This document shows, one piece after another, positions 157-62,509 of a stretch of DNA of 64,000 nt; the first letter of the stretch is position 1; every line of letters starts with the position of its first letter. The DNA comes from Styela clava. Taxonomy: Eukaryota. Below the pieces are notes generated by a model. The model saw nothing but the letters and a program-made list of their open reading frames with translations, was not told where the DNA came from and searched no databases. The DNA is taken from assembly GCF_964204865.1 (NCBI RefSeq), contig NC_135255.1, positions 20,336,001 through 20,400,000 on the forward strand, given 5' to 3'. The translations under genes and the position numbers were made by a program.

Positions 157-824
157 ATCACAACGCTCAGACCATGCCAACACAGCACACGTGACTGATC
201 TTGATTCTACTGAAATGGGAAACATAAGATATACAGGACAAAACGGAACGTTAGGTAATATGTTAGTAATTTCAAAGACAGCGCTGGGATATGCTAGAAA
301 GTTGCACTTTTCGTGTCCATCCGTTTTTAAATCTTGGGGTGTTTTTGTTATTTTTGTTCAACGCGCGTTATTGTCGTTTTTTATTAATCGGACATCAGAA
401 ACAACTCTCATGTTGGTGCTCGGTTACCCGATCCAGATTAGATATTTCCGAATTCTAATTCCAACAATGTCTCAATGTCTCATTTTGAACTTTCAATATT
501 TGTTTACAAAGCTCATTCGAACCCACAGGCATTCAACTAGATCGGTTATTAAATAAATAAATATTGACTCAATATTAACTAATGTTTCTGACAAAGTAGG
601 GGGCTTAAGGTAAACACTAATACCCTACAACAAGGACAATAAATTCCAGTATTAGATTTAAAATGTATTCAGGTACCGATGGATACGAAGAAGTTGAAGC
701 TGGGCCATCTGGCGGATATGAAGAGATACGACAAGCAACTGATGGATACGAGAAAGTGCAAATAAGGGCAACAACTCAGGAACAAGAAAACGGATATAAA
801 GACACGTATGCTAACATCGCATGA
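157..824 (+). CDS. Gene 0 (5'-truncated by window): last two exons of a class A CUB receptor, ITAM-like cytoplasmic tail
   Basis: Exons 157-254 (SQRSDHANTAHVTDLDSTEMGNIRYTGQNGTL) and 673-824 (GTDGYEEVEAGPSGGYEEIRQATDGYEKVQIRATTQEQENGYKDTYANIA*), with canonical AG/GT sites. Lengths (98 and 152 nt) equal the homologous exons of genes 2 and 8. Confidence 0.85.
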
Positions 825-3453
825 AAGTCGGAAAGCAAATATTGTGCAACAACACAGTGAAAACTTTTCTCTTATCAACCGACTCTCTTCTACAGAGCAT
901 TGATATTAATCACTTCTTTGTAGAATTTGCAATGACTTCATACGAAATAATTAGTTGCCGTCAAATTATTTCCTGTTTTATCTGAACAGAAATGTTTGGT
1001 GTTTCATGCCGTTCGAATGATTGCTTGGATATTAAAGAACTTCAAACAATTTGACCAAATAAAACTTACATGGGAATGAAAAAACGTCTTTTTTATAATT
1101 TATCTATTTTACCTATTTTTATCAACTATACAATTTTCTTCAAATGTTAGTATATTATTGTCGATTTGTAGCGAACTAAACTATCTATTTTACTTAATAT
1201 TATTATATGTATTCCCGACAGTTCTTCATATATGTCCCGAAGATAGTTTGATCTGATAGCGTACAACACTGTGGGAGCTCATCCCATATTTTCAAAAATA
1301 TGTTTTTTTATTAAATTTTCACACTATTTCATATAAAACTAGAATTCTGCAGTAATCTAAAAGCAGCGATATTCCATTGAGTTCGACACATTTTTAAATG
1401 CGTGGCTGTCGGCATCCTATTATAATAATGTTCCGAATCTGGTTCATTATTTTTCATCCTAAATACGACATTATCCTAACCATGTCATTAATTAAATATA
1501 TATCCCTGTCAAGGCCCGAACCAAAATTAGGCTTCATTTTAGAAAAACCAAATCGAAGAAATAATGAAATAAAGCCAATGATCTTAGAATGAATAGCTTG
1601 TCTGCGCAAAACTATCTCAACCAAGACAGTTCAAAGCAAGTAAGAGCTATTCTCCGATTAGTCACCAATGATGCGTTCAATCTAAGCAAGACTATGGCTT
1701 TGAACTCTGGTCTTTAAATTGGCACTTTACATATGTTTTCAAGTAAACCCCTTACACAATTGTTGTTGTTCAAGAGCCGTTGCTACGAACCCCGCGGTCA
1801 GTATCAGTAGTTTCTAAGTTCTAGAATTTTGAAACATTTTCCATCATATATTAAAACCTTTGGTGTCGCTGCTCGATCACGAGACTTTGTATGTGTAATA
1901 TAATAATAAATACTTGTCATTTAAACTTGAAGGATGAATCATTTGGCGACGCCTGGTTTTGAGACAACACACAAAGGGTATGAATACGCTATGGCGCAGC
2001 TTCGCATCTTTTTTAGTTTGACGTTTTTACACACTTTTCACTCCTAACAAGGCCGGGCGCCCCAGAAGTGTGTGAACTACTCGCCTACCGTGTAAAATGA
2101 CTGATACCTATGGGCAGGGGGTATATTCACTTGGCTAACACAAACAGTCCCCAAGCTCGTTATAGAACTTAAATAAGGTAAATCGGCCTAACCTGGTTCA
2201 TATACTACGCGAGTACCCGAAGTCATGCATGAGTAGTCATTGATATATAAGATATCTTGAATAACCGGGAGCGTAGCAGTCGGCATTGTTTAATTCATTG
2301 TACCCTGAGCGAGGTGACAGGCATGGATTACAATGGTTCTTACGAAACTGTTTGTGGGCCACGGTCTCCGCCCCTACTATTAATACGAGCTCAAACGCAT
2401 ACCCTGGTATAACCGAACAAGAGGCCGTTGGTCGCGATATCAATACGTTGGATTTGATTCGGCTGTGCTCTCAAGAGATATAAACGAATTTTTATTCTAT
2501 TTTAAACATGGAAACATCCGATGTACGTCTGATAAGCGTTTGTTGAGTTATCGAAAGCATAAGCAAAGACATGATTAAGTTGCGTTAATGAGAATTTGTT
2601 GCGTAATATGACACGAAGGTGAAATGAAAAGCAAAAACATGGATTGGGTATATATATAGGTTGTATATAAATAGGCCTACCTGTTTTTTGTACGACTTGT
2701 CCTATCTTGTTCAGTCAGACTTCTTTCAAGCCAGATAGATTGTGTTTTCAAAGAATAAATTTACAATGAAAACAAAAAAGTCCTGACTACTTTGTTGTGA
2801 TAGTGCATAATTTTTAATGCATGCCTACGGGATCCAATCCTAGATTTGCTCATTTTTTATATATGACCCATGCCAAATTATAATTCGCATAGCTAAGATA
2901 AGTCACGGGCCATATATAAATGTTGAGCAAATCTATGAACGGAACTCGTAGGCATGCACACTAAAAATTATGCACTATCACAACAAACTTGTCAAGACTT
3001 TTTTGCTTTCATTTTAAAAGACAAACATCTGACTGATTCAGACAGGATAAGACGTCGGTCGTCAAATATAAATTTATTTTTCGAAACACAATCAATCTGG
3101 CTTGAAGGAAATCACAGATTTGTGAGTTTTCGTAGCAGGAATATAGCAGATAGCAGGTACAGTCAAGACACCACCAATAAAAAAATATCGATATATTTTG
3201 TATTACTCTGTGTTTCTAAGCGCACAGGCTCCAGACGGAGTTTCGAGTGTTATATGTAATCGGAGTCGATATTCGAACCAGTTTAATAATTTCCTGATTA
3301 ATTCTGGTCAAATATATTATTTTCGATGTAATTTTCCTTTTTATCTAGTACCAAAGATCTTGGTTTATTGAACATGATTTGGTCGTGGATCGCCATCTTT
3401 CTTATAGGTGAGTAAACAAGAAGACAGGGAAAAGCAATTAATTGTATTCTAAC

Positions 3454-4023
3454 TGGGCTGGGAATTTCAGTGAAACTGCTTCAACCGCTAACCGGGTAAC
3501 CGCAGCGTCAGGTTATGTCACAATGGTCCTAGATCAATTTCGCAGTTCTGGCCCATTGGAGATTGGAGTGGTTAAAAGTTGATAAATCCGGATTTAAACA
3601 CGTAGCGGTAATAGCGCAAAATAGATGGCATCTTCTGTAGAAAGCCCGAGCCACTAATGTAAAAATGTGATACTTGAGAAAACCACGTTTTAAAATTAAA
3701 AATGGTAATTATCCATCTAGAGTTGGGAATGATTTGGAAGTTTAATTTGAAACATTATATTGTGACCGGAAACTGATTCTGAACTTATCATTGTCAAGTT
3801 TTATATTCAGCAATACTCCGATTATTTCCTTACATTTCCTTGATGCTAACGAATAAAATGAGTGATATCTTTTTGAATTCAAGGCCAAAATAGATAAATT
3901 GTGATAAACTATTCATTTGAAGAAATTGTGCAGTACCAAGGTGATTATTACCTGAGATGTCAGTTAACGGTAAAAAAACGTAACTGTTAACAATTTAATA
4001 TTGGTTAACCATTCCCAGCCCTA
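3454..4023. mobile_element. Non-autonomous hAT-like MITE in intron 1 of gene 1
   Basis: TIR TGGGCTGGGAAT...ATTCCCAGCCCTA; perfect 8-bp TSD ATTCTAAC (3446-3453, 4024-4031). The paralogous intron of gene 8 (~41091) has the empty site. Confidence 0.85.
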
Positions 4024-5597
4024 ATTCTAACTAAGTAGTGAACCAGCAAATAATTTTGACATAAAATGCTGCCATGCTTATCATGTTCCTGATAAAAAAA
4101 AAAATTGCATTACTTATTTTTCACTAATAGCATTCGTCGGCAAATTCTAATCTTGCTAGCTGTGGTTGCTAAGTTTGCTGAAAAAGCAGTCGCTAAAAAT
4201 ACCAATTTTACTATTTTTAATTTCTTCTTCATATGCCTACTCTAACCATTTGTTCAATGTGTTAAATCTATCTATATTGTTTAACACATCAAATCCTAGG
4301 TACTTCAAACGATTATAGAAAATTAAAACACTTGGTCGGACAAAAAAACCACTCTGCCCAAACACTACGAAAATCTCATAAAAGTATAAACGATTTTTTC
4401 AATGTAATTTTGTATTTTAGGCTCCTTAGCAGGTAGTAATGGTCAGTGTGGTGGAAAAGAAATTAACATAACAGGAGGAAATGGTGTAATAAGTTCTCCA
4501 AATAATTCCAAAGAATATGGAAGAAGTGCAAACTGTTCATGGAATTTCACTCCTTCGGAAGATTACGCCCTCGTGTTAACAATCACGTATCAGAGGCTTT
4601 ATATAGTCACGCTAGGAAACATAAAGCTATGCTTGGGATCGTACAGTCTTACAATAAATAACGGTATGGGATATGAAAATACTTGGATTTACTGTTGAAA
4701 ATATAACTTGCTCTACAAAAAACAACGGTTAGAATGTAGATGACCTTGTTAACCTAACTCATGCTCTATTTCATTCATTAAGGAGTGGTTAGCTATTTAA
4801 CGATGATGTGATAAAAAATAATCATCAACACATACTCTGTAACGATCAGGCTTCCCATATGTATTGATGATTATTTTTTATCACGTCATACCCTAATAGT
4901 AGTGCTCTATGTCAGACTATATTGTAAATCGGGGAGCATTCCTGACTGCGAATTCTATTGCTCAATCGTGTGAAATACCATTTATTCAATTCAGATACAC
5001 AAGAATGTACGCGATACGTTGATGCTACATATTCAGGTTAGCTGATTGAACCCTTTGAATACTTCGACTCTATGTGCGGCAGCGATGCAGAGAATAATGT
5101 TCGCGTTCAGTATGTATCGGACGGACGCACATATAATGGTTCGGGAGCAGTGACAGGCACAATGGGTTTTAAAATTCAGTACAAGTTTCTACAATGTTCC
5201 ACAGTTATAGGTAAGTTTTGGATTTATTTCTGAACAATAAATATGAAATTTTTCTGTGGAAATGAAACTTCAAGTTTCAGTCATTATTAATTTGGCCTTT
5301 TGATTTTGAAGTATTCACTGACACAAGTCAGGAATCACAAAATAAGGCAGTTATATCAAATATAACGTTTGAAATTGGATAATTCCTTGTTTTCTAAGAA
5401 ACAACGACTGAATACGACCAACAAGCGAGTACCAATCCAGACAACAACCATTCCGTTTCTACCTCAAATGTAGCCCCGCACTCGACCGTTGCTACGATAA
5501 GTGCAACCGAGATTACACAGACCGATACAACAACGAAGTCCGCTATCACGGGTAAGCGTACAGATTAATTTCTCCTGACAGTTATTATATTCTATAA

Positions 5598-5779
5598 CAG
5601 GGGAGTGCAACTAGCTATACCTGAGCTTGTGCGAAGCTAGCAAGGTATGTCATAACATCAATTACCAACGTTTTTGTACCTGCAACTATTAGAAATCATA
5701 TATTGAATAAAGGTGCAGGTCGCGGTTTTGCCCAGATGTTTGTATTTGTCCCTCCTGTATTAAAGGTTGCACACCCCTG
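5598..5779. mobile_element. Short hAT-like MITE
   Basis: Ends CAGGGGAGTGCAAC...GTTGCACACCCCTG; flanks TTCTATAA/TTCTAAAA (8-bp TSD, 1 mismatch). Confidence 0.7.
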
Positions 5780-8641
5780 TTCTAAAACATAAAAAACAAA
5801 ACATCTTTGAAATTTTTATTGGGTAAATACTAAATGAACGTTTCAAGATTTTCAGTCTAAATAGGCCTGCAGTACATATAGCTTAGCTTAAGAATTTTTT
5901 CACCGTGACTGAAGCTGTGGTATTCGTGTTTAATATAGGTCCAAGATTTACTCTCAATAGTTTGGTGACAAAGAAAATTTTAAGCATCATATGAAATAGA
6001 TCCCACAGTGTATTCTGAAACTCAGTAAATACTGTAATTGTCGAGTAACGTATGTTTAGTGAGACAAATCAAGAAGTCAAATCCAATTGAAACCGGAAGC
6101 CCTCAAAATTATTTTACAAGCTAATCAAATCCACAAAAGTTCATACTAAATTATACGTCTTTTGCATTATGCTGAAACGAGCAAACGCAAATAATGAGTT
6201 AAATTTCTCATCTAACTAAAAAGATAATATTTAAATTTCCCATTGAATGTAGTGCATAAACTCTAATAAACCCGATGTAAACAAATACATCTTACAATTA
6301 GGTCTGTTGTTATGTGAACTATCATGCAGCAGAAAATTAATCATTCAGAACTATTTCCTATTATAACAGATACAGAAAACGATGATGCAGCATCCAAAGA
6401 AACTGATGGGAATTCAGATGGGATAAGCGACACCGCAAAGCTTTTCCTCGTTTCTATCCCAGGATTCATTGGCATTATCATACTCGTGGTGACTGCAATC
6501 GTATTTTGCAGGAAAAGAGGGTAATCAACTAAAATACTTCCTTGATAAGGCAATTCAATATTTGTCTTGGTTATACACGTACAGAGATAAGTATATAATT
6601 AGCATAAGCCGAACGGATATCTTGCATAGGCGCAATGTATAGTTACTGCGTTGAACCAAACCATATAATCGTTGCTTATAAGATATTTCATATTCAACCC
6701 CAGTGACTTGAGTAGGCAATTCCGAACGAAAAAGCTTTCAGTTCCAATAATTTTAGCTTTCCAATCTAAGTATCGCGGCCTTGCCCAGAGCCTTGTTCGC
6801 AGTGAAAGTCTGAAAACGCCTTCAGCTTCTGAATCCACCCAAGGTAACATTTCATGAGCGTTGTATAAGTCAAAGTTAAAGTTGAATATAATTGAAAAAA
6901 TATGATAAAAAATATAAGTAATGAATATCATTGCGATAATACGAGGATATATTTTAACAGGGACAAATCTCAAAAATATAAAAATTTTGAAAAAGACAAT
7001 GTTGGTGAAAATAAGATGGGAAATGCTGAATCTCCAATCCAAGAACCTGACCACGACACTGCTACAGGTACAAACTTAATAAATAGATCGTGATACGGGA
7101 ACACATCCCAAGTTGACTAAAATCTTATATCTAAAACCTCCTCTTCAATTTTAAAAACGTTTCGCTCTCGAAAGGAAGCGCTGAGTACAAAAAAATGAAC
7201 ATGATGAACTCTTGAGAAAATAATAGTGTACGATCGTTTTAATTGAAAAAAGTTTTTGCCAAGTTGCAAAGTCATATAAACTTGTCTAAAAGCAGTATCG
7301 ATTTAAATTAAAAGCGAAATTATATCAGTATATATTTCAGCCGAAAATAATGAGCCGACAACCTCAACAGTTCAAGACGAGGAAACTCCGTATGCAATCA
7401 TGTATTCTGCTCTTGCTCGGAAAGACAAAGAGGGGGATGCAAATGAATTATTATGGGGTAAACTAAATATTCCGATTACAAAAACATTTGTAGTGAGAAA
7501 GATCACAAATGAATGAGCAACGTTCACATATCATAACGTATCTCAGGGTCTCTACAACTATTCTGCATTGATCCAAGAACACATCAAATCGCATAAAAAA
7601 TCATTTCATGGAATCAAATGCAATATGTTTTTTTTTAGATGAAAAGAAAACATCGGCAATTGAAGAAGACGAGCATAAATACGACATGTATTCTGCCGTT
7701 GTACGAAAGACTGAAGGAGGTGACAAAGAGACGATTCATGTGTGATCGCCCGATAGTTTTCCTACTTTTTCATACGATGACGGCTTGCTTATGTTTTAGA
7801 AGTCTGACTTGCTCTTCACACCTTGATTTTCAAATTATAACCCAAGCTTATAGTGAAAGTGAGAAGGGGGACTGGGAATTATTAGACACGTTTGCTTAAT
7901 TTTTGTTTGTTTTTGGCAGTCGTGTTAATTTTGTAATTGGGATTGTTTACTTTGTGATTAATTACTGGGCCAATCGCGTTCAAATATTATATCATGAGCT
8001 GATAATAACATCACTTCTATACATTCTCTGGAACCCCAACTTTTTAGATTTTTCATCTAACGCTATCTGCGAGCTTACGTCCATCGAAATAAGTCAGTTC
8101 ATGGTGCTCAGCGCCAGTACCCTTTCGTTTTCGTTCATTTAACTTAATGTATATTATTAGTATTGGACTCTTTATTATTAACAACTATCCATGGATTTAA
8201 TCGACTCCCTACGCTTGTATCTGTCTCTCTCAACTGTTTCTGGGTTCTTTTTAATTGAATTAACTGAGCAATGCAGATAACGATTCATGAGCATTTTTAT
8301 TATTTTATTATCTTTAAAACAGCATATTATCGTAGCTGTAATCTTATTATTTTACTTTTCTCTGCTTGGACTGGAAAATTCTCACATTTAATAATATTAT
8401 TTGTCTTGCTGCATTCAAACAAGTCTTTTGTTTTTTAAGCCTTAAAACTGTCAAGCAGGAAAACGTAAGATTTAAATTGACACAGACATTTTGCATACCT
8501 ATACACCTATTAGCAACAATCACTTATATAACGCCATTGATTTAGCTGGAGCAATTGCATCACGCCAAATACCTTTTTGAAAATCACCAATGAGATCGCG
8601 TGTTTCTTAGTTTTAAAATCTCGATTTGTTAGTGTTTAGAC

Positions 8642-9562: not shown

Positions 9563-12500
9563 ATGGTTTCTTCGTTGATCGCCATCTTGATTTTAGGTAA
9601 GTAAAGCAAGTAACAATAATCAACTGTATTTTATATATACCGTATACGATAACAAACTACGACAGAAATTATTCTCAGATTTCTGATCAAAAATCTCGCA
9701 TTTCCCATATTTTATCGATAAATCTTAGTCCCGCTCAGCTCAAAAGAAAGTTACAAAAAAACTATTTGCGCGAAATATCAATTTAACAATGTTTTTATTT
9801 TTCTGCCATTTCAAGTGTTGAATCTATCCCAACCAAGGACACATTAAATCCCAGATACTTCGATTTGAAGTATTACTTTTCCAACTGCTGCCTACTCTTT
9901 CTCATATTATCGCATTTCCGTTACTGTCAAGAAAAATCATTTAATAGCACAACCTTATACAATAACCTCATTTTCCGTACTCTAGGCGCTGTATCCGGTG
10001 ACAACAGTCAATGTGATGGAGAAGAGATGAACATAACATCAGGAAACGGTGCAATAAGTTCTCCAAATTATCCCAAAGAATACGGAAGAAGTGCAAATTG
10101 CTCATGGAAATTCACTCCTTCGGAAGGTTACGCTCTCGTTTTGACAATCACATATCAGAGGCTTTATATTCTTGAAACTTCGGGAAAGCTATGCTTGGGA
10201 TCTTATGTTCTCTCCATAAACAATGGTTAGTATTACGCCAATATTAGTTGAGAATTTACAGAAGTTCTCTCGTATGAGTTGGGGTTGAACAATTTAGGAA
10301 AACCAAACAAGCTATGCTTGGGATTTTGTGTGCCTTTCCATAACCAATAGTAGTTAGTGAATATAGCGATATTTGAATTGAATGTAGAAAATTCACTAGC
10401 TTGGATTTGAATAAAATCTCACAATAAAGTGGTTTCCAATTTATTCTCAATACATTTGATTGATTGATTTTTTACCCTCGATTTATCAACTCTGAAAATG
10501 CTACGTAGTCTTATTCCTAAACATGTGCATGGCAAGGCCAGATTAGGCTTGCCACGATGGAGTGATAAAACGACGCTCCCGTAGTATGTGCACCAAGATG
10601 ACGAACATAGTTCGTGTACCAGGTTAGGATGAGGTCATAATTTTATTCCAATTTTCCTTATTTTAGTTCTATCACGAGTTCGGAGACTAGCCAAGTGACT
10701 CCCGTAGTATTTGTATCTGAAATTATGGCCTAATCCTAACCTGGTATACACACTTCGTTCCGGTATCCGCCATCTTGGTTCACATACTACGGGAGTACCG
10801 ATAAAACTATATTTGATGCACAGGAAGATACATGGATGGTATACGTGCCGCTACATTGATTGAAGTTTCCCATGTGAATCGGAAAACGAACCGATGATAG
10901 GAATCTGTTGGAATTGTCGATAAAACAGTAATCGACATCATAAAGGAATCGGCGGATATTTGCCAATGTTTCTGAATGTCATAAAAGTACTCATTCGAAA
11001 TAGCCTCTTTGCTTACTAGTATCGCGCAAAGGCAAAATAGTGTGTTCATTTTACAATGAATGTCAAAACGATAAAATTAAATTCAGATGCACAAGATTGC
11101 TCGAGATATTTAGATGCCAGATATTCATATACACTGACTAAACCTTTCGAATACTTCTGCGCTGGAGACGCAGGGAATAAATCGAGTGTTCATGTTCAGT
11201 ATATATCGGACGGGCGAACATATACTGGTTCGGAGAATGTGATTACAGCAGCAATGGGTTTCAGCATCCAATACAAGTTTTCACAATGTTCCACAGTTAC
11301 AGGTAAGTCTTGAACAATAAATATGAAATATTTCAATCAAAGTCACTAAACTTATTTATAATAAGTCTTCTTCAAACAAAGACGAGTAATCATGCACACG
11401 CATAAAGATTTTTGTGCATGGAATTATTTGAAAGAACGAATCTTCTCCATTCGGTGTTTCCAACTGATTTACATATTGATTTACACACGCGAACATTGAG
11501 TGTGCTAGATGTGGCAAGTGTTTGAAAGCGTAAGACAAAAAAATGACCCTTGATTCTAGTGAAAACCATTGGCTATTAGGAACGAAGTGTATAAGTGGAA
11601 AAATAAAACATAAATTATTCATTTTAATGCAGCACGCGCTCACCTGGATACAACTAATGCTCCTACTACCACACACTATCCGTCTTATCCCACTACTGAC
11701 GTAGTCAACACGGTTGAAATATTACCCAATACTGCAAATTTGGAAGTGGTTACTCGTATTAACGCTAAGACAACAGGTTTTAAAATCAGACCAGAAATAG
11801 GCATCACGTCGGATCGTTCAACAATCACCCCATCGCAAAATACTATGGGTAACTATGAATTTTGTATGTAATATTTAACCATCGGATGATGAAACCCATC
11901 CTGGGTAAAATTACCCCATTTTAGTACATGGTGTCGTTGCTTTTCTAAGTTTGTCCGAATATTCTTTTGCGTTCTATATTTAATCTGCTAATTGTTAGAT
12001 GACGTGCTGTGTACTGAGTGATCAGTTATGGACATTCAGTCTTTTTTTTCATCCCACTGCATAAAACTGCATTCGAAATTGATTGAGCGATTCAAAGGTT
12101 ACTATATACAGTACTTGTAACAGGAACAGTCAGCATATGCGCTGATAGACATTCGAGCACAAGTGGGATGAGTCAAACAACTCTAATTCTCCTCCTCTCC
12201 ATACCGGAATTTATCTTTGTTTTACTCATGATCGTGGCTGGGATTGCATTCTACAGAAAAAGACGGTCCGTATTATTTATGATTGGAATTATAAATCCTA
12301 ATCTTTATCCTAAAGCTTAATGATCCGATATTCATTTCATCGCCAACCGACACTAACAAAATATGAAACGATATGTGAATTCCTAAATTTTCTTAGAAAC
12401 CAAAACTGGTTACTGGGCAATGGCACACGGGATCAAAAAGTACTCAGGACAATTTATTTCATAAATTTGCAACAATGATGAATCTTCTCGTAGCCAGAGT

Positions 12501-13557
12501 GTGTGTTAGTTACGTTATAATTTTTTCATGAACGTACTAATTAATCATAAAGTATGATCTTAAAAAAGGCGTGGGTCACGCTTTATGAATCGTAGGTACG
12601 TGACGCACGACTAATAAAATTAGTAGTCGAGTTGCGTTTTCAATCCAATCACTTTTTCACTTACACTTTTCAGAACAACAATATTAGTACTACATACATG
12701 GATTAACCTAGTTAGAATGTTTTTGATGAGGGTTGGTATTACAATTATTTACATCCTCTGTACGCGGTGCTGTAATCTCTGTCCAAAATTAAACAAATCA
12801 TCCTAAACTTCGAGCGCTTGTAAACTTGCTACTCCTCCCACATTGTCGATATTTGTATCTTATGGAAATATTTTAAGGACCCCCCTAAAGACGAATCTGA
12901 TGTGATTTAATATACCCAATATTTTCAAAGATCACAGCGCTCAGACCATGTCAACACTGCACAAGGGACTGTTCCTAATTCTACTGAGATGGGAAACATC
13001 AGTTCTATGAGACAAAAAGGAACGTCAGGTAATCTGTTAGTAATTTCAAATACAGCATTGGGATATACTAAAAAGTTGCACTTTTCGTATTGAACCGATT
13101 TAAAATCTCAAGGTGTTTTTGTTATTTTCGTTCAACGCTGTTATTGTCGTGTTTATGTATGTCAGTGGAACAACTCTCATGTTAGTGGTTGGTTTTCCGT
13201 CCCAGATTAGATATTTTCGGATTCCAGCAATATCCGGCTCATTTTGAACTATCAATATTTGTTAATAGAACTCATTCGAACCCACAGGCATGTAACTAGA
13301 TCAGTTACTAACTTTTCTGACAAGGTAGGGTACTAAGGTTGATACAGTACTATCCTACTACAACAAAGAATAGGAATTTCAAAATAACATATAGAATATA
13401 TTCAGGTACCGATGGCTACGAAGAAGTTCAAGTCGGGCCATCTGGTGGATATGAAGAGATACGACAAGCAACTGATGGATACGAGAAAGTGCAAATCGGG
13501 GCAACATCTCAGGAACAAGAAAGTGGATATAAAGCCACGTATGTGAACGTTGCATAA
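9563..13557 (+). CDS. Gene 2: class A CUB-domain type-I membrane receptor (acidic TM, ITAM-like tail), apparently intact, 365 aa, 7 exons
   Basis: Exons 9563-9596, 9986-10225, 11087-11302, 11633-11848, 12124-12265, 12931-13028, 13406-13557 splice into an open 1098-nt frame. CUB hallmarks C..NITSGNGAISSPNYP..Y..SANCSW, SDG, GFSIQY; TM LILLLSIPEFIFVLLMIVAGIAFY then RKRR; tail YEEV/YEEI/YEKV/YVNV. Confidence 0.88.
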
Positions 13558-14958: not shown

Positions 14959-14961
14959 ACG

Positions 14962-24500: not shown

Positions 24501-25049
24501 ATCATGAATTCTTACGGAAACGACAGTGTACGGTTGTTTTGATTGAAAAATAATTGTCAAGTTGCAAAGTCATAAAAATTTGCCTAAAAACAGGAACAGT
24601 TTAAATCAAAGCGAAATTAAATATCAATGCTTAATTCAGCTGAAAATGATGAACCGGCAAATTCAACAATTCAAGATGAGGAAGGTCCATATACTATCAT
24701 GTATTCTGCACTTTCACGACAAGACGAAGAAGGTAATAAAAAGAGAACCATATGTGGTAGACTGAATATTTTGACGACAAAAACATACCAGTGATAAAGA
24801 TTACAAATTAATAATTTAATGCGTTTACATAACGTGACATATATTAATGTTTTTAGAAGCATTTTGCATTGGCCTAAGCATCCTTGAAATCGCAGGTAGA
24901 AATATTTCGATACATCAATTACCATATATACTTTTATTTCAGATGTGAAGGAAAACTCAGAAATTAAAGAAGACGGGCACAAATACGACATGTATTCAGC
25001 CGTTGTAAGAAAGATAGAAAGAGGTGACAAAGAGACGATTCATGTGTGA
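21582..25049 (+). CDS. Gene 4: class B CUB-domain type-I membrane receptor (ITIM tail), apparently intact, 357 aa, 8 exons
   Basis: Exons 21582-21615, 22141-22395, 22669-22887, 23130-23231, 23671-23827, 24245-24351, 24640-24732, 24943-25049 give an open 1074-nt frame. TM LFLVSIPGFIGIILLAVTAIVFC; tail GPYTIMYSAL...KYDMYSAVV...ETIHV*. Confidence 0.88.
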
Positions 25050-28000: not shown

Positions 28001-28125
28001 GGAGATGTTTATATCTGAATCATCCGGTTTTTTAAAATCTAATCTCTCAAATTAATGCGGGCCATTATGATACTGTTGGGTTTTCTTGTTTCTTTACCAG
28101 GAAGAAAATGATTAGTCTAGTTAAC

Positions 28126-41025: not shown

Positions 41026-44000
41026 ATGGTTTGGTCGTTGATTGCCATCTTTATTTTAGGTGAGTTAAGTTACCAACTATTAATAATTAATTGTATTCTA
41101 ACTAAGCAATAAACTAACAAACAACGTTGACACAAATCGCTTCCATGCTTCTCATATTTCTGTGTAGAAAGTTTGCATTTCTCACATTTCATCAAAAGCT
41201 TTTGTCAATAAATTTTAGTTATACTGAAATAGTGTAATTTGTCAAAATAAATCCATCGCTAAGCATTGAATATTTTACTCCATATGGTATTGTATTAAAC
41301 TAACCGAAAGGATATCTCTGAATTCTATCCACCTATGAGAATTATGCCCCAAAACAGTTTAACCACTCCCGTCGCAAAAACGTTTTGACATTGTACTTTT
41401 CCACTTCCTAGGAACTGTAGTCGTCAGCAATGGTCAGTGTGATGAAAAGGATATGAACATAACATCAGGAAACGGCGAAATAAGTTCTCCAAATAATCTG
41501 AACGAATACGGGAGAACAGCAAATTGCTCGTGGAATTTCACTCCTTCGGAAGGTTACGCTCTCGTGTTAACAATCACGTATCAAAGGCTTTATATAGTCG
41601 CTCCACCAGGCAGGAAGATATGTTTGGGATCGTATGTGCTCTCCATAAACAACGGTTAGTTGATATAGGAATCTGAACTTACTGTAGAAAAATTCAGTAG
41701 CTTGGATTTAAATAAAATCTAATAATAAAATTGGTTTCTAATTCATTTTAAGTACATTTGCTAAGGTAGATTTATTCTTTACTTTAAATTCCTTAACTCT
41801 GAAACTGCTACGTAGTCTTATACCTATACGTGGGTATGGCAGGCCAGATTCTGCTTGCCACGATAAAACTAAATTTGATGCACAGGAAGAAAATGGATGG
41901 TACATGTGCCGCTGCTTTTAGTGAAGTATTCTCTGTGAATCGGAAAGCGAATCGATAGGTTGGAATAGTCGATAAAACAGTAATCGACATTATACAGGAA
42001 TCGGCCGATATTGCCAATGTTTCTGAATGTCATAAAAGTACTCATTCGAAATAGCCTCTTCTGCTTACCAGTATCGCGCGATGGCAAAATGATGTGTTCA
42101 TTTTACAATGATTGTCATCATGATAAAATTTAATTCAGATGCACAAGATTGTTGGAGATATTTAGATGCCAAGTATTCACATGCACTGACTAACCCTTTC
42201 GAATATTTCTGCGCTGGAGACGCAAGGAATAAATCGAGTGTTCATGTTCAGTATATATCGGACGGGCGAACATATACTGGTTCGGAGAATGTGATTACAG
42301 CAGCAATGGGTTTCAGCATCCAATACAAGTTTTCACAATGTTCCACAGTTACAGGTAAGTCTTGAACAATAAATATGAAATATTTCAATCAAAGTCACTA
42401 AACTTATTTATATAAGTTCTTTAAACGAAGACGAGTAATCATGCACACGCATAAAGATTTTTGTGCATGGAATTATTTGAAAGAACGAATCTTCTCCATT
42501 CGGTGTTTCCTACTGATTTACATATTGATTTACACTCGCGAACATTGAGTGTGCTAGATGTGGCAAGTGTTTGAAAGCGTAAGACAAAAAATGACCCTTG
42601 ATTCTAGTGAAAACCATTGGCTATTAGAAACGAAGTGTATAAGTGGAAAAATACAACATAAATTATTCATTTTAATGCAGCACGCGCTCACCTGGATACA
42701 ACTAATGCTCCTACTACCACACACTATCCGTCTTATCCCACCACTGACGTAGTCAACACGGTTAAAATATCACCCAATACTGCAAATTTGGAAGTGGTTA
42801 CTCGTATTAACGCTAAGACAACAGGTTTTAAAATCAGACCAGAAATAGGCATCACGTCGGATCGTTCAACAATCACCCTATCGCAAAATACTATGGGTAA
42901 CTATGAATTTTGTACGTAATATTTAACCATCGGATGATAAAACCCATCCTGGGTAAAAATATCCCATTTTAGTACATGGTGTCGTTGCTTTTCTAAGTTT
43001 GTCCGAATATTCTTTTGCGTTCTATATTTAATCTGCTAATTGTTAGATGACGTGCTGTGTACTGAGTGATCAGTTATGGACATTCAGTCTTTTTTTTCAT
43101 CCCACTGCATAAAACTGCATTCGAAATTGATTGAGCGATTCAAAGGTTACTATATACAGTACTTGTAACAGGAACAGTCAGCATATGCGCTGATAGACAT
43201 TCGAGCACAAGTGGGATGAGTCAAACAACTCTAATACTCCTCCTCTCCATACCGGAATTTATCTTTGTTTTACTCATGATCGTGGCTGGGATTGCATTCT
43301 ACAGAAAAAGACGGTCCGTATTATTTATCATTGGAATTATAAATCCTAATCTATCCTAAAGCTTAATGATCCGATATTTATTTCTTCGCCAACCGATACT
43401 AACAAAATATGAAACGATATGTGAATTCCTAAATTTTCTTAGAAACCAAAACTGGTTACTGGGCAATGGCACACGGGATCAAAAAGTACTCAGGACAAGA
43501 TATTTCATAAATTTGCAACAATGATGAATCTTCTCGTAGCCAGAGTGTGTGTTAGTTACGTTATAATTTTTTCATGAACGTACTAATTAATCATGAAGTA
43601 TGATCTTAGAAAAGGCGTGGGTCACGCTTTATGAATCGTAGGTACGTGACGCACGACTAATAAAACTAGTAGTCGAGTTACGTCTTCAATTCAATATTAC
43701 ACTTTTCAGAACAACAATATTAGTACTACATACATGGATTAACCTAGGTATAGTTAGAATGTTTTTGATGAGGGTTGGTATTACAATTATTTACATCCTC
43801 TGTACGCGGTGCTGTAATCTCTGTCCAAAATTAAACAAATCATCCTAAACTTCGAGCGCTTGTAAACTTGCTACTCCTCCCACATTGTCGACATTTGTAT
43901 CTTATAAAAATATTTTAAGGACCCCCCTAAAGACGAATCTGATGTGATTTAATATACCCAATATTTTCAAAGATCACAGCGCTCAGACCATGTCAACACA

Positions 44001-44599
44001 GCACAAGGGACTGTTCCTAATTCTACTGAGATGGGAAACATCAGTTCTAAGAGACAAAACGGAACGTCAGGTAATCTGTTAGTAATTTCAAATACAGCAT
44101 TGGGATATACTGAAAAGTTGCACTTTTCGTATTGAACCGATTTAAAATCTCAAGGTGTTTTTGTTATTTTCGTTCAACGCTGTTATTGTCGTGTTTGTGT
44201 ATGTCAGTGGAACAACTCTCATGTTAGTGGTTGGTTTTCCGTCCCAGATTAGATATTTTCGGATTCCAGCAATATCCGGCTCATTTTGAACTATCAATAT
44301 TTGTTAATAGAACTCATTCGAACCCACATGCATGTAACTAGATCAGTTACTAACTTTTCTGACAAGGTAGGGTACTAAGGTCGATACAGTACTATCCTAC
44401 TACAACAAAGAATAGGAATTTTAAAATAACATATAGAATATATTCAGGTACCGATGGCTACGAAGAAGTTCAAGTCGGGCCATCTGGTGAATATGAAGAG
44501 ATACGACAAGCAACTGATGGATACGAGAAAGTGCAAATCGGGGCAACAGATCAGGAACAAGAAAGTGGATATAAAGCCACGTATGTGAACGTTGCATAA
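41026..44599 (+). CDS. Gene 8: class A CUB-domain type-I membrane receptor, apparently intact, 366 aa, 7 exons
   Basis: Exons 41026-41059, 41412-41654, 42139-42354, 42681-42896, 43172-43313, 43973-44070, 44448-44599 give an open 1101-nt frame. TM SIPEF; tail GYEEVQVGPSGEYEEIRQATDGYEKV...TYVNVA*. Confidence 0.88.
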
Positions 44600-51326: not shown

Positions 51327-51570
51327 AACAAGAGCGCTATGCTTAAATATATGGACACGTTTGAAATAAATGAAAGTAATAGCCTTCTGAGGAAAAATTT
51401 TATCTTTGAGCACTGAAAATTTCAGAGCAATTGGCCCAGTAATCCAAGAGAATAGCGACTGTTTAGGTTTTCCACTAGGTGTCCAAAAAGTGTCAAAGAA
51501 CAAGTTTAAGGATAAGAACAACAACATAATATTGAAACGATAGTTTTCTCCACTAACGTGTTCAATAATC
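51327..51570. repeat. Dispersed repeat family (related pieces at ~47280-47420 and ~50595-50790)
   Basis: Shared core GTAATAGCCTTCT..GGAAAAATTTTATCTT...CACTGAAAATTTCAGAGCAATTGG; element class not determined. Confidence 0.6.
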
Positions 51571-52497: not shown

Positions 52498-55400
52498 ATG
52501 ATTTGGTTATTGATCGTTATCTTACTTTTAGGTGAGTAAAGTAAGCTACACTTGTTAAACAACAAATTTTATTTTACGTGCAATAAGCGAACGACGTAAA
52601 CAAAAATTGCTTTTATGCCGCTCTAATGTCTGATCAACAAAAACATATAACCAATTTACCTACGATCTATGTTTCAAAGCAGTTGATCAAATATAAGGAT
52701 CGTTCAGGCGCCAAGCAGTTTGATCTTTGTCATTTCTGCTTTCTAGGAACAGTAGCCGGTAGCAATGGTCAGTGTGATGGAAAGAAGATGAACTTAACAT
52801 TAGGAAATGGTATAATAAGTTCTCCAAATTATCCCGAGGAATACGGAAAATCAGCAAACTGCGCATGGGATTTCAATCCTTTGGAAGGTTATACTCTCGA
52901 ATTAACAATCACGTATCAAAGACTTTATATATCTGTAACAGAAACAAGCGTGAAGATTTGCTTGGGGTCTTACCTTCTTTCCATAAGTAACGGTTAGTGA
53001 AATAACAATAATTTAAATAAAAAAAGTTTTCTCTGTAGAAGTTGTACGATCCAAGATTTTATTTTGATTCAGCTTAACCCTGGGACCCCAGGAAAGCATA
53101 TTCATTCTTGATTTCGTGGTAATAGTTATCGAAACTTTACTATTCCACTTATTTCTCACTTTTAATCAAATGTGGGCAGTATTAAATATTATATATATAT
53201 ATAATACGGTGAGATGTACGTTGGTGTAAAGTATTCATATTAATTAAACCAATTTAAATCAACGTGTGGCGGAAACATAGTTCAGCCGCTGCCAAATAAA
53301 AAAATACTTGAACGGAAAGTACAGTCACCATTATATATTATGTATAACAAAATTTAAAGTGATAAAATTCAATTCAGATACTCAGGAATGTAGCAGATAT
53401 ATTGATAAAAACTATCTCATGACATTGATTGGAGTTCAGCATTTTGACTATTTCGACTCTATGTGTGGCGAGAACGCAGAAAATAAGCCAAGTGTTCATG
53501 TTCAGTATATGTCAGATGGACGAATATATACCGGTACTAATACAGTGATAACCAAATCAATGGGATTTAGTATCCAGTACAAGTTTTCAGAATGCTACAC
53601 GACTGCCGGTAATTAATCTTTGCAACTACATAAAATTACTTTGATGAATATCCTGAATTGTAATTTCGAAACCACGATATAAATACGTACCAATTTTTTT
53701 TTTATTTGAATGAAGACATATCCGAAACTAAAAAAAATGCAGTATTAAGCAATTGATTGCATTACCAAATATACTCAACCTTGGTAAAATCATTTTCTCA
53801 GAAACAACAACTGAATATGTCCAAACGAGTATTTTTGAAGGAAGCTCTAACATAGAACAAACAATTACGAATTTTGAGGACAACCGTACTCTTTCTACTA
53901 TAGGTCAGTAGGTTTCTCATAAACGTTTGCTACGAAAACATCAATCGAAACTAGACAACTACCCAACAAAAAAGCCTTTTATTTCTAGTACAAAAGGTGA
54001 ACCTGTTGATAACATGAAGTTGATTAAATATCGCGGAACTTCGAAACCTTGGGAGTTCAGGATTGGAAAATCATTATTTAACAATCATTATCTATGTTTT
54101 ATATTTTAGGCCTGAATTAGTCAGCAACAAAAATTGATATGTCTTCTAATAAATTAATTAAACCCTGGCCCTGGGTTAGGTGGCCAATATGGGGGTTGAT
54201 ATCAAGGTTCGTCATCTATTGGTACAGGGTTTTATTAACAAGGAAGATTAAATATAAAACAGATTATGAATCAAATAATTTATTTATCGGGAAATGATGT
54301 ATCAACCCGAAGCACTTGGGATTATTTTACAAGCTATTAAAGTTTATGTAAATAAACATAGAAGTTTCGCATTTCTTTATTGTTCCATGTCATGCTAAAA
54401 CAAGAAAAAAATCATAAAAAAATCTTTATATTTTTTTTTCGAAATCGTGCACTGACTCTAACAAAACCGATGTGATTAAAGCAGTTTTACTATTGAGTTT
54501 GTTATAAGAAAACTCATACTGAATCAATGGCCGTGTCGTACTACAAAACTAATATGAGCCCCCTTAGCAATATTATTCCTTATTACAATACTAATATCAT
54601 CACCTCTAGCACTCTTATTTCCTATTATATCAGACACAGCTGGAGAAACTGATGGCGCCAATTCAGATGGAATAGGTGACACTGCAAAGCTTTTCCTCGT
54701 TTCTATCTCTGGATTTATTGGTATCATAATACTTGTGGCGACTGTAATCGTATTCTGCAGGAAGAGAGGGTATTTAACTCATACTGATTACTTCCTTGAT
54801 TAGCAATTAATTATTTGTCTTGGTTATTTACGTATAGAAATACCTATAGGTCAAAAGAAGCCTAAGCAAAACGGATATATTGCATGGGTGTAATGACCTA
54901 GTGGTTATGGCGTCGGACTGTAATCGCCGTTGATATGACATCTCATATACAACCGTACACAAGCCATCTAGTAACTTGGACAGACAATCCCGAATCATTA
55001 TTATTATCGTGACTGCTTACTTAAAGCCGTGTTCGCAGTGAAAGTCCAAAAACGACTACAACGGCTGCATTCATCCAAGATAGGATTTTATGAAAGCGTT
55101 GTATAAGGTCAAGTCGAATATAATTAAAAGAAGAAAATATAATTCTTGAATATCATCGTGATAATATATGAATATTTATTAACAGGGACATATATCAAAA
55201 AAACAAAAATGTCAAACAGGACAATGTAGGCGGAAATAAGATGGAAAATGCTGAATCTCCAATCCAAGAACCGGACCAAGACACTGCTACGGGTAAGAAT
55301 TTATTAAATAGATCGTGATACGGGAACACATCCCAGGTTGACTAAAATCTTATATCTGAAACTTCCTCTTTAATTTTGAAAACGTTTCACTCTCGAAAGG

Positions 55401-55960
55401 AAGCACTGTGTACAAAAAACTAAGCTTTATAAGCCATGAACAATTTGAATTTCTGCGGAAACGATAGTGTACAATTGTTTTGATTTAAAAAAAATTGTCA
55501 AGTTGAAAAGTCATGAAAATTAAATATCAATATTTAATTCAGCTGAAAATGATGAACCGGCAAATTTAACAATTCAAGATGAGGAAGCTCCGTATACTAT
55601 CATGTATTCTGCCCTTACACGACAAGACGAAGAAGGTGATAAAAAGAGAACCATATGCGGTAGACTAAATATTTTGACGACAAAAACATAACAGTTATGA
55701 AGATTCCAAATTAATACCGGTATTTTAATACGTTTATATTCCGTGACATATAATTCAAAGTTTTTAGAAGCATTTTACATTGGCCCAGACATCCTTAAAA
55801 TTGTAGGAAGAACTATTCCGAGAAATCAATTATCTTAGGTACTTATATTTCAGATGTAAAGGAAAATTCAGCAATTGAGGAAGACGAGCAGAAACACGAC
55901 ATGTATTCTGTCGTTGTACGAAAGACTGGAGGAGGTGACAAAGAGACGATTCATGTGTGA
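52498..55960 (+). CDS. Gene 9: class B CUB-domain type-I membrane receptor (ITIM tail), apparently intact, 351 aa, 8 exons
   Basis: Exons 52498-52531, 52747-52992, 53378-53608, 53802-53903, 54634-54769, 55186-55292, 55543-55635, 55854-55960 give an open 1056-nt frame. TM LFLVSISGFIGIIILVATVIVFC; tail APYTIMYSAL...HDMYSVVV...ETIHV*. Confidence 0.88.
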
Positions 55961-57061: not shown

Positions 57062-57401
57062 TAGTTGCACGCAAACGTCACAGTTATTTGGCTTAGACAA
57101 GGTTTGCTTTAGCAAAGCAATAGTTGAGAATTTGCATTAAGAAGAGTTACAGTATGGACATGGCCACTAACATATCACGAGTTGAGCGCCCAATTAGAAC
57201 TTTGACAAAATGATATACATGTTTGTAGTTTTAGTTGCACGCAAACGTCACAGTTATTTGGCTTAGACAAGGTTTGCTTTAGCAAAGCAATAGTTGAGAA
57301 TTTGCATTAAGAAGAGTTACAGTATGGACATGGCCACTAACATATCACGAGTTGAGCGCCCAATTAGAACTTTGACAAAATAATATACATGTTTGTAGTT
57401 T
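57062..57401 (+). repeat. 170-bp tandem duplication
   Basis: TAGTTGCACGCAAACGTCACAG... starts at 57062 and again at 57232; single copy in the paralogous region near 9090-9260. Confidence 0.85.
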
Positions 57402-57641
57402 TCGAGCGAAATTAATATTCAATATAAAAGTTGGCAGAAATAATTGAAAGATTGCCAAGACGCCATTGTTGACAGTTATCGAGGATAGTATTACTGAATA
57501 GTTACACAATAAAAATGTCGCCGTTGAGTGACAATTAGAGATGTGCAATCAGACTATATTATGTCTCATTTGATTTGAATCAAATAATTTCGATATTAAT
57601 TTTTAGTTCTGAACCAGGACGAAAAAATTAGTTTAGTTAAC

Positions 57642-57675
57642 ATGGTTTGGTCGTTGATCGCCATCTTAATTCTAG
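57642..57675 (+). CDS. Gene 10: signal-peptide exon only (remainder outside the window or lost)
   Basis: ATG GTT TGG TCG TTG ATC GCC ATC TTA ATT CTA G|GTAAG = MVWSLIAILILG, the same 34-nt exon as in the other copies; flanks match those of gene 2. Confidence 0.75.
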
Positions 57676-62508: not shown

Positions 62509-62509
62509 A

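What the first reader, a model, noticed from the sequence alone, without database searches (positions are those of the whole stretch)
157..57675. Candidate paired activating/inhibitory receptor cluster built on a single CUB domain
Seen: at least 11 co-oriented paralogs share signal-exon/CUB/stalk/TM architecture but carry two unrelated tails, in the order A, B(psi), A, A(psi), B, soluble, fragment, A(psi), A, B, unknown. Established: clustered genes with related ectodomains and opposite ITAM/ITIM signalling define paired receptor families (KIR, LILR, Ly49, Siglec, SIRP, CD300), which use Ig or C-type lectin folds. Inference: this is a convergent paired-receptor system using CUB as the variable recognition module, plausibly for immunity, allorecognition or gamete recognition. 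I know of no described family with this architecture, but I could not search.
Basis: partly seen in the sequence, partly recalled or inferred. Interest (0 to 1): 0.95.

Follow-up and report, generated by a model that had tools for sequence, protein, structure and literature searches.

The report
Sea-squirt CUB receptors with opposing tails
The sea squirt Styela clava carries a roughly 190-kb cluster of about 22 fast-turning-over genes for membrane receptors with one CUB domain outside the cell and one of two tyrosine-motif tails inside, a layout like vertebrate paired immune receptors on a different protein fold, but with expression and function untested.

Summary

**Gene models.** My GT-AG splice models for four intact genes equal RefSeq proteins of Styela clava exactly. 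All of these proteins are named "uncharacterized".
- Intact type A: U2 and U8.
- Intact type B: U4 and U9.

**Domain.** It is a CUB by Pfam on its first half and by fold search on the whole domain.

**Tails.**
- Type B carries YTIM, IMYSAL (a canonical ITIM) and DMYSAV 27 residues later. These motifs are invariant in all copies, apart from Ile to Phe before the ITIM tyrosine in one gene.
- Type A carries YEEV-x7-YEEI-x6-YEKV plus a C-terminal YxN. This is ITAM-like but fails the strict consensus.

**Cluster.** It spans C6:20.22-20.41 Mb with about 22 genes, and both tail types occur only there.

**Evolution.**
- The CUB tree rejects one clade per tail type.
- CUB exons are twice as diverged at synonymous sites as the TM and tail exons.
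- Half the copies in the window are broken.

**Limits.**
- No clear positive selection was seen.
- No ligand is known.

The scan noted similar CUB-TM-ITIM clusters on other pieces of this genome (s1-815900, s1-814213). I judge it a new variant of a known kind, and interesting.

The parts
157..824 (+). U0: 3' end of a type A gene. Tail exons A1 157-254 and A2 673-824 with stop.
   Evidence: The upstream exons lie outside the window. Its first CUB exon at C6:20334138 has a TAG stop.
3374..7745 (+). U1: type B pseudogene. Exons 3374-3407, 4421-4663, 4995-5210 (stop at 5039-5041), 6370-6520 (TM), 6961-7067, 7341-7433 (donor GG), 7639-7745.
   Evidence: RefSeq models only a truncated 257-aa product that starts inside the second CUB exon (P0161).
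9563..13557 (+). U2: intact type A gene, 365 aa. Exons 9563-9596, 9986-10225, 11087-11302, 11633-11848 (T/P-rich stalk), 12124-12265 (TM with Glu), 12931-13028, 13406-13557.
   Evidence: The splice model equals RefSeq P0162 (LOC120332060) exactly.
15374..17683 (+). U3: type A pseudogene. Stop at 15397-15399, frameshifts in four exons, start codon lost.
21582..25049 (+). U4: intact type B gene, 357 aa. Exons 21582-21615, 22141-22395, 22669-22887, 23130-23231 (stalk), 23671-23827 (TM), 24245-24351, 24640-24732 (YTIM/IMYSAL), 24943-25049 (DMYSAV, stop).
   Evidence: The model equals RefSeq P0151 (LOC144424639 isoform X1) exactly. Isoform X2 (P0031) uses a donor inside the second CUB exon.
28126..29911 (+). 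U5: signal exon 28126-28159 and CUB exons 28491-28754 and 28979-29197, all open with GT-AG. No stalk, TM or B1 exon. Remnant of B2 at 29530-29594 and intact B3 at 29805-29911. At most a secreted CUB protein.
   Evidence: No RefSeq protein for it turned up in my searches.
31933..33361 (+). U6: fragment. CUB exons 31933-32172 (first Cys changed to Tyr) and 32421-32642, with the same tail remnants as U5. No signal exon.
   Evidence: RefSeq P0029 is 166 aa with no signal peptide. U5 and U6 are 85% identical tandem copies.
35799..38690 (+). U7: type A with one frameshift in the second CUB exon (36631-36851) and a 24-nt in-frame deletion in the TM exon. Probable pseudogene.
41026..44599 (+). U8: intact type A gene, 366 aa. 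Exons 41026-41059, 41412-41654, 42139-42354, 42681-42896, 43172-43313, 43973-44070, 44448-44599.
   Evidence: The model equals RefSeq P0163 (LOC144424300) exactly. It is 94% identical to U2 from intron 2 to the 3' end but only 83% in the first CUB exon.
44448..44599 (+). Type A signalling exon: GTDGYEEVQVGPSGEYEEIRQATDGYEKVQ...GYKATYVNVA-stop.
52498..55960 (+). U9: intact type B gene, 351 aa. Exons 52498-52531, 52747-52992, 53378-53608, 53802-53903, 54634-54769, 55186-55292, 55543-55635, 55854-55960.
   Evidence: The model equals RefSeq P0159 (LOC144424234) exactly.
55543..55960 (+). Type B signalling exons: ...EEAPYTIMYSALTRQDEE (55543-55635) and ...HDMYSVVVRK...IHV-stop (55854-55960).
57642..57675 (+). 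U10: orphan signal exon (MVWSLIAILIL-G) with a GT donor and no CUB exon behind it.
57739..62724 (-). Ty3/Gypsy-type LTR retroelement in what was intron 1 of U10. LTRs at 57739-57953 and 62510-62724 are 100% identical. It has a single 1375-aa gag-pol ORF, 58145-62272.

Best explanation
This is a lineage-restricted multigene family of type I membrane receptors of the ascidian Styela clava that turns over by birth and death.

**Architecture.** Each intact gene encodes, in order:
- a signal peptide;
- one CUB domain split over two phase 1-1 exons;
- a Thr/Pro-rich stalk;
- one TM helix;
- one of two cytoplasmic cassettes.

**Cassette B.** YTIM, then the ITIM IMYSAL, then DMYSAV 27 residues later. 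I infer that it works as an inhibitory tail. After phosphorylation by a Src-family kinase, the two tyrosines would dock a tandem-SH2 phosphatase of the SHP type.

**Cassette A.** Three tyrosines 11 residues apart (YEEV, YEEI, YEKV) and a C-terminal YxN. I infer that it works as an activating docking platform for Src-family, Syk-type and Grb2-type SH2 domains.

**How the family evolves.** Diverse, older CUB front ends have repeatedly been joined to younger, homogenised TM-and-tail cassettes of either kind. Related ectodomains therefore come with opposite tails.

**Shown versus inferred.**
- Shown: gene structure, domain identity, motif conservation, cluster extent, module re-assortment, pseudogene load.
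- Inferred: phosphorylation, which effectors bind, opposite signs of signalling, the expressing cell type, and the biological role. The likeliest role is haemocyte non-self or allorecognition.
For: **Structure**
- Four splice models equal RefSeq proteins exactly.
- CUB PF00431 scores above Pfam's cut-off on the first half of the domain.
- Foldseek top hits for the whole ectodomain are all CUB domains: C1r/C1s/MASP CUB2, Neto2, PCPE-1 and spermadhesins.
- AlphaFold gives a TM helix at 254-286 and disordered stalk and tail.

**Motifs**
- PY[TA][IF]MYSA[LI] is kept in 8 of 8 copies and MYS[AV]V[VI]RK in 9 of 9. Other tail columns are 75-84% conserved.
- The IMYSAL-type ITIM pattern matches in four of five full B proteins. 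In all intact A proteins of the main CUB subfamily the pattern is YEEV-x7-YEEI-x6-YE[KE]V plus YxN.

**Cluster**
- About 22 CUB genes lie at C6:20.22-20.41 Mb.
- Genome-wide, A-tail (10 hits) and B-tail (8-9 hits) exons are found only there.

**Modularity**
- Both deep CUB subfamilies carry both tail types. A-tailed genes as one clade is rejected (lnL difference 115.6, p-AU 8e-60), with at least 4 tail switches.
- For the same gene pairs, pS is 0.57-0.60 in CUB exons against 0.28-0.38 in TM and tail exons.
- U2 and U8 form a mosaic.

**Turnover and variation**
- 6 of 11 units in the window are broken or partial.
- A retroelement with identical LTRs has inserted.
- One protein of the older assembly (P0035) has no counterpart here. 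Alleles between the two assemblies differ by 2-8% in amino acids.

**Pathway context**
- Botryllus, of the same ascidian family, has Src, Syk-family, SHP-1, SHIP and Grb2 homologues (PMC12582321).
Against:
- The strict ITAM consensus is not met in any S. clava A tail. The first A motif degenerates in two paralogues, to YGKS and YETF.
- The long A-type protein P0157 carries VGYENV repeats that also fit the ITIM pattern.
- All these motifs are also YxxPhi sorting signals.
- CUB dN/dS is 0.3-0.5 overall. The variable loops reach 0.8-0.95 but not clearly above 1.
- The nearest A/B ectodomain pair is 86% identical in one exon, far from the over 90% of classic pairs.
- The structure model is only moderately confident: pLDDT 60-74 in the CUB domain, from an alignment of 12 sequences.
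Confidence: 0.5

Rival explanations
1. These are non-immune scaffolding or adhesion receptors in the manner of CDCP1 and DCBLD1/2. Both tails would be positive phosphotyrosine docking platforms that differ only in which SH2 adaptors they bind: A for Src and Grb2, B for PI3K p85 through YTIM. There would be no activating/inhibitory opposition.
For: - The feature-based Atlas look-alikes of the B protein are CUB-domain proteins, CDCP1 and DCBLD1 (scores 0.85-0.92; leads only).
- DCBLD1/2 are CUB-bearing scaffold receptors whose tails are phosphorylated by Fyn and Abl and bind CRKL (PMC6029619).
- The B tail holds an invariant YxxM, and the A tail holds YEEI and YxN.
Against: - CDCP1 and DCBLD are single-copy, conserved genes with several ectodomain modules. 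Here there are about 22 clustered, fast-turning-over single-CUB genes, half of them broken.
- The I-x-Y-x-x-L motif plus a second Y-x-x-V 27 residues away is the usual geometry for tandem-SH2 phosphatases.
- No sequence homology to CDCP1 or DCBLD was found beyond the CUB fold.
Confidence: 0.2
2. These are endocytic or sorting receptors. The tyrosine motifs would be YxxPhi signals for AP-2, and the CUB domain would capture extracellular cargo as in cubilin. The two tails would give different trafficking itineraries.
For: - YTIM, YSAL, YSAV, YEEV, YEEI and YEKV all fit YxxPhi.
- The best sequence match among solved structures is cubilin (E 9e-7).
Against: - One sorting signal would do. The tails keep two to five tyrosines at fixed spacing in acidic contexts, including YEEI and a C-terminal YxN.
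- The residue at -2 of the ITIM is conserved (I, once F). YxxPhi does not require that.
Confidence: 0.1
3. This is the same receptor family, but it acts in gamete or self-sterility recognition rather than in haemocyte immunity. CUB-only secreted forms (U5) would act like spermadhesins.
For: - Spermadhesins, which are single secreted CUB domains, are among the structural matches (1spp, 1sfp).
- Rapid turnover and variable loops also fit reproductive proteins.
Against: - ITIM-type and multi-tyrosine tails are typical of leukocyte-type signalling, not of known sperm-egg binding proteins.
- There is no expression evidence either way.
Confidence: 0.12
4. This is a decaying gene cluster without present function. 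The motifs would be leftovers.
For: 6 of 11 units in the window are broken or partial.
Against: - Four genes have complete ORFs and GT-AG sites identical to the RefSeq models.
- dN/dS is below 1 in every exon class.
- Tail motifs are invariant over pS of about 0.3-0.4.
Confidence: 0.03

Closest known systems
Vertebrate paired receptors with tail-borne motifs on both partners (FcgammaRIIA/FcgammaRIIB; CEACAM3/CEACAM1)
   Same: - Related ectodomains carry either an ITIM tail or an ITAM(-like) tail within the receptor chain itself.
- The genes are clustered.
- Decoy or soluble derivatives occur.
- The families evolve rapidly (CEACAM: PMC5112662, PMC2832619, listed).
   Different: - The ectodomain is a single CUB, not Ig.
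- The A tail is not a strict ITAM.
- A and B ectodomains are only 70-86% identical.
- Ligand and cell type are unknown.
KIR / LILR / Ly49 / SIRP / CD300 / Siglec paired families
   Same: - Tandem clusters with activating and inhibitory members.
- Pseudogenes and haplotype differences in gene content.
- Tail swapping by recombination.
   Different: - Those activating members have short tails and a basic TM residue that recruits DAP12 or FcRgamma. Here the A members of the main CUB subfamily have an acidic TM residue (Glu) and their own tyrosine motifs.
- The folds are Ig or C-type lectin.
Botryllus schlosseri Fester family and Fester co-receptors (FF/FcoR), from the same ascidian family, Styelidae
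   Same: - Large polymorphic clusters of type I receptors in a tunicate.
- ITIM, hemITAM and other YxxV/I/L 'core' motifs.
- Motif swapping between alleles and isoforms (PMC12582321).
   Different: [quoted passage not shown]
- Here a CUB ectodomain and the motifs sit on one chain.
- No sequence relation was detected.
CDCP1 and DCBLD1/2 (vertebrate CUB-bearing, tyrosine-phosphorylated scaffold receptors)
   Same: - Type I membrane proteins with CUB ectodomains.
- Multi-tyrosine tails that are Src-family substrates (PMC6029619).
- Nearest feature-based look-alikes in the Atlas.
   Different: - They are conserved single genes with several ectodomain modules.
- There is no ITIM/ITAM-like dichotomy and no tandem expansion.
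Spermadhesins
   Same: U5 would give a secreted protein that is little more than one CUB domain. Spermadhesin structures are among the fold matches.
   Different: - U5 is a recent deletion derivative of a type B receptor and keeps a remnant tail exon.
- About 12-14% sequence identity in the fold alignments (1spp 12%, 1sfp 14%).

Membership tests
CUB domain (Pfam PF00431) | Match to the family profile above the curated cut-off | tested here: met
   E 2e-8 to 2e-4, 21.8-34.8 bits against a cut-off of 21.4, on exon 2 or on whole proteins. Only profile positions 1-67 of 110 are matched. Three divergent paralogues fall just below the cut-off.
CUB domain (Pfam PF00431) | Whole-domain beta-sandwich CUB fold | tested here: met
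   The top 45 listed Foldseek PDB matches are all CUB domains. E is 3e-5 to 4e-3, with 131-153 aligned columns and target-normalised TM up to 0.60. Model pLDDT is only 60-74 in this region.
CUB domain (Pfam PF00431) | Conserved cysteines forming the two CUB disulfides | tested here: inconclusive
   Six invariant ectodomain Cys (C21, C50, C82, C97, C117, C160 of P0163). C21 and C50 have canonical spacing. The pairing of the others was not established.
CUB domain (Pfam PF00431) | Ca2+-binding Glu/Asp/Asp triad of ligand-binding CUBs | not tested
   No residue-level alignment to a Ca2+-binding CUB was made.
ITIM-bearing inhibitory receptor | [I/V/L/S]-x-Y-x-x-[I/V/L] in the cytoplasmic tail | tested here: met
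   IMYSAL or IMYSAI in four of five full B proteins and FMYSAL in the fifth. The block is invariant in 8 exon copies.
ITIM-bearing inhibitory receptor | Second ITIM or ITSM about 20-30 residues away, for tandem-SH2 phosphatases | tested here: inconclusive
   DMYSAV lies 27 residues downstream and is invariant, but Asp or Glu at -2 fits neither ITIM nor ITSM.
ITIM-bearing inhibitory receptor | Tyrosine phosphorylation and SHP/SHIP recruitment | not testable with these tools
   Needs biochemistry.
ITAM-bearing activating receptor | Y-x-x-[L/I]-x(6-12)-Y-x-x-[L/I] | tested here: not met
   YEEV-x7-YEEI and YEEI-x6-YEKV each have Val at one +3 position. No strict match occurs in any S. clava tail. 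A strict ITAM (YARL-x9-YSRL) occurs only in the homologue P0164, from an unnamed run.
Paired activating/inhibitory receptor family | Clustered genes with related ectodomains and two tail classes | tested here: met
   About 22 genes in 190 kb with A and B interleaved. Both CUB subfamilies carry both tails.
Paired activating/inhibitory receptor family | Near-identical ectodomains and a shared ligand between an A and a B member | tested here: inconclusive
   The best A/B pair is 86% identical in the first CUB exon (U1, a pseudogene, against C6:20251496). Other pairs are usually 70-75%. The ligand is unknown.
Paired activating/inhibitory receptor family | Co-expression on effector (immune) cells and opposite signalling | not testable with these tools
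No paper names these loci.

The most novel reading that the evidence does not exclude
The cluster would be a polymorphic recognition system based on CUB domains that varies in gene content between individuals. It would be an innate 'missing-self' style receptor repertoire of haemocytes. It could underlie the allograft rejection and allogeneic haemocyte contact reaction long known in solitary ascidians such as Styela, whose receptors have never been identified. On this reading, chordate-lineage animals would have assembled ITIM/activating receptor pairs on a third, unrelated fold, and type A tails could stand in for the LAT/SLP-76 scaffolds that ascidians lack.
Probability: 0.2. Interest if true: 0.85.

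Novelty: new variant of a known kind. Interest (0 to 1): 0.62.

Why it matters
**Convergence on a third fold.** Clusters of related receptors with opposite tyrosine-motif tails have arisen on Ig and C-type lectin folds in vertebrates, and on Ig-like folds in Botryllus and Hydractinia. A CUB-based case in a tunicate would be another independent origin. It would support the idea that the conserved part is the ITIM/ITAM signal-integration machinery and that the recognition fold is interchangeable.

**A candidate for an open question.** Solitary ascidians reject allografts, and their haemocytes kill allogeneic cells on contact (PMC5465252), but no receptor is known. This cluster gives concrete candidates:
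- four intact genes in the window, about a dozen in the whole cluster;
- defined exons and motifs that can be tested directly.

Tried and rejected
No RNA or read evidence could be gathered, and read laying was not used.
The organism behind the two Logan homologues (P0132, P0164) stays unknown.

**Handling of spliced models**
- Joined spliced models were not sent to any search tool. Searches used single exons by reference, or RefSeq proteins returned by the searches.
- Exons were joined only inside local scripts, to check reading frames and identity to RefSeq proteins.

**Searches that led nowhere**
- The profile search of 1.84 billion representatives was dominated by multi-CUB proteins of the cubilin/CSMD type. 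Only ten single-CUB family members were visible in the top 150, so more distant relatives may be hidden.
- The word-indexed protein searches with a type B and a type A protein (P0031, P0163) returned only S. clava proteins, and the one with the Logan protein P0132 only itself and a second Logan protein.
- Literature searches for CUB with ITIM, ITAM or ascidian, and for the LOC identifiers, found nothing relevant.

**Tests with a negative or mixed result**
- The sliding-window dN/dS test gave no window convincingly above 1.
- Allelic differences between the two assemblies are not concentrated in the CUB domain.

**Readings rejected**
- Chance similarity, because E-values reach 1e-45 and splice sites are conserved.
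- Transposon-borne repeats, because the only transposable element is the LTR element at 57739-62724.

Full report
**What is in the window.** The window is AT-rich animal DNA (35% G+C). A tblastn search with the two CUB exons of one copy finds nine co-oriented exon pairs, with E-values from 1e-17 to 1e-45. I clustered all stop-free fragments and read the DNA around them. This gave a complete seven-exon model for gene U8 with canonical GT-AG sites, and reference exons for the second tail type from gene U9. Projecting these exons onto every unit gives the order A (tail end only), B pseudogene, A, A pseudogene, B, no-TM copy, fragment, A with frameshift, A, B, orphan signal exon. The ectodomain exons are all phase 1-1, as expected for a shuffled extracellular module.

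**Check against independent gene models.** A profile of the first CUB exon, searched against 1.84 billion representative proteins, returned mostly giant multi-CUB proteins. It also returned ten proteins with a single N-terminal match. Nine of them are RefSeq proteins of Styela clava, all named 'uncharacterized protein LOC...'. Seven are recorded on a contig of 24,297,679 bases, the length of the window's contig C6, one is on another contig, and one comes only from the older annotation. The tenth comes from an unnamed sequencing-run assembly.

My models for U8 and U2 equal P0163 and P0162 residue for residue. U9 and U4 equal P0159 and P0151 once a 102-nt stalk exon that I had missed is added. 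I did not send joined models to any search tool. Searches used single exons by reference, or proteins that the searches had returned. Exons were joined only in local scripts.

**The protein.** Pfam CUB matches the first half of the domain above its cut-off. An AlphaFold model of P0163, built from a 12-sequence family alignment, has these features:
- a beta-rich ectodomain, pLDDT 60-74;
- a disordered stalk;
- a TM helix at residues 254-286;
- a disordered tail.

Foldseek against the PDB puts only CUB domains at the top, aligned over 131-153 columns: C1r, C1s and MASP CUB2, Neto2, PCPE-1, neuropilin and spermadhesins. So the two exons together make one divergent CUB. Six ectodomain cysteines are invariant.

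**The two tails.** The TM exons of the two classes are homologous. The first tail exons share phase and similar length. The last exons are unrelated.
- *Type B.* It ends with ...EE-x-PYTIMYSAL... and ...K[YH][DE]MYS[AV]V[VI]RK...IHV. The first block holds a YxxM and a canonical ITIM. The second tyrosine lies 27 residues further on. Both blocks are unchanged in all 8-9 copies of the cluster, including the remnants in U5 and U6, apart from Thr/Ala, Ile/Phe and Leu/Ile at three positions of the first block; the remaining tail columns are 75-84% conserved.
- *Type A.* It ends with DGYEEV-x7-YEEI-x6-YEKV ... GYKATY-x-N-x-A. The spacing is that of an ITAM, but Val replaces Leu/Ile at +3 in two of the three motifs, so the strict consensus is not met. 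The first motif has decayed in two paralogues. The best-kept parts are YEKV and the C-terminal YxN.
- *A caveat from one paralogue.* A long type A paralogue (P0157) has repeated the cassette, and its VGYENV units also fit the ITIM pattern. This shows how loose these patterns are.
- *The TM helix.* Type A helices of the main subfamily carry a Glu where type B has Gly. P0157 lacks it, so this switch is not universal.

**The whole cluster.** The window is C6:20336001-20400000. Searching the genome exon by exon shows the following:
- About 22 CUB genes lie between 20.22 and 20.41 Mb on both strands.
- The A-tail exon has 10 hits and the B-tail exons 8 and 9 hits, all inside this cluster.
- Three further CUB genes lie on C5, one on C17, and there are a few distant ones.
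- The C5 protein has an A-like YEEI/YENL tail.
- The gene after the window is a type B with its own signal exon.
- The orphan signal exon at 57642 is followed, 64 bp on, by an LTR retroelement with identical 215-nt LTRs and an open gag-pol frame.

**How the family evolves.**
- The CUB tree has two deep subfamilies, and each holds both tail types.
- Forcing the A-tailed genes into one clade costs 115.6 log-likelihood units (p-AU 8e-60), and at least four tail switches are needed. I named the groups after seeing the tree, but the effect is large.
- Within a tail class and for the same gene pairs, synonymous divergence is 0.57-0.60 in the CUB exons and 0.28-0.38 in the TM and tail exons.
- U2 and U8 are 94% identical from intron 2 to the 3' end, 83% in the first CUB exon, and unalignable further upstream.
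- So old, diverse front ends are combined with younger or homogenised signalling cassettes.
- dN/dS is 0.3-0.5 overall. Three loop regions with length variation reach 0.8-0.95, against 0.1-0.3 in the strands, and none is clearly above 1.
- One type A protein from the older S. clava assembly (P0035) has no counterpart in this assembly. Corresponding proteins differ by 2-8% between assemblies, without concentration in the CUB domain.

**Interpretation.** The architecture, the conserved ITIM-type cassette, the multi-tyrosine cassette, the clustering, the module swapping and the pseudogene load together resemble paired receptor families. They resemble most closely the pairs in which both partners carry their own motifs (FcgammaRIIA/B, CEACAM3/1). 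Botryllus, a member of the same ascidian family, has Src, Syk-family, SHP-1, SHIP and Grb2 homologues but lacks LAT and SLP-76. It uses Ig-superfamily receptors with ITIM and hemITAM motifs for allorecognition (PMC12582321). I therefore favour an inhibitory role for B and an activating docking role for A.

Four points keep my confidence at about 0.5:
- the A tail fails the strict ITAM test;
- every motif is also a YxxPhi sorting signal;
- A and B ectodomains are not near-identical;
- nothing is known about expression.

The rivals are CDCP1/DCBLD-like scaffold receptors (Atlas look-alikes; PMC6029619), endocytic receptors, and a reproductive rather than immune role.

**Novelty.** The genes are annotated but unnamed. 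Full-text searches found no paper on a CUB receptor family with ITIM and ITAM tails, and no paper naming these loci. Other notes of this scan describe similar CUB-TM-ITIM clusters on other pieces of this genome. This is a new variant of a known kind. It is worth following up because solitary ascidians reject allografts by an unknown receptor system (PMC5465252).

Noticed in passing
window 57739-62724 (-): Complete Ty3/Gypsy-type LTR retroelement. It has 100% identical 215-nt LTRs and one open 1375-aa gag-pol frame carrying protease, RT, RNase H and integrase. It looks like a very recent insertion, 64 bp behind an orphan signal exon.
   Followed up: partly
window 57062-57401: Two tandem copies of a 170-nt unit, 99% identical, just upstream of the orphan signal exon.
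   Followed up: no
window 22669-22887 (U4): RefSeq isoform X2 (P0031) uses a donor inside the second CUB exon. This removes the last 25 residues of the CUB domain, including the final conserved Cys. If real, the splice form would have a broken ectodomain.
   Followed up: partly
C6:20275000-20280000 (L007), minus strand; protein P0157: A type A paralogue whose tail cassette has expanded to 12 tyrosines in repeated GYENVQN...DEYEEV units. Its TM helix lacks the Glu seen in the window's type A genes.
   Followed up: partly
proteins P0035 (older assembly) versus P0162 (same LOC120332060): NCBI gives the same locus name to proteins that are only 58% identical in the two assemblies. The older one resembles the pseudogene U3 in the first CUB exon and U7 in the stalk. 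This suggests haplotypes with different gene content, or different intact copies.
   Followed up: partly
window 18586-18988, 26343-26684, 40216-40461, 46187-46498 (-): A repeated block downstream of several units (group 17). It may be part of the duplication unit or an unclassified repeat. The 6-kb spacer 46100-52300 between U8 and U9 has no long ORF.
   Followed up: no
C5:5179486-5238970 and C17:3079643-3080237: Small satellite groups of the same CUB family. C5 has two intact genes and one broken gene, and C17 has one copy with a stop. The tails are A-like, YEEI/YENL (P0095).
   Followed up: partly
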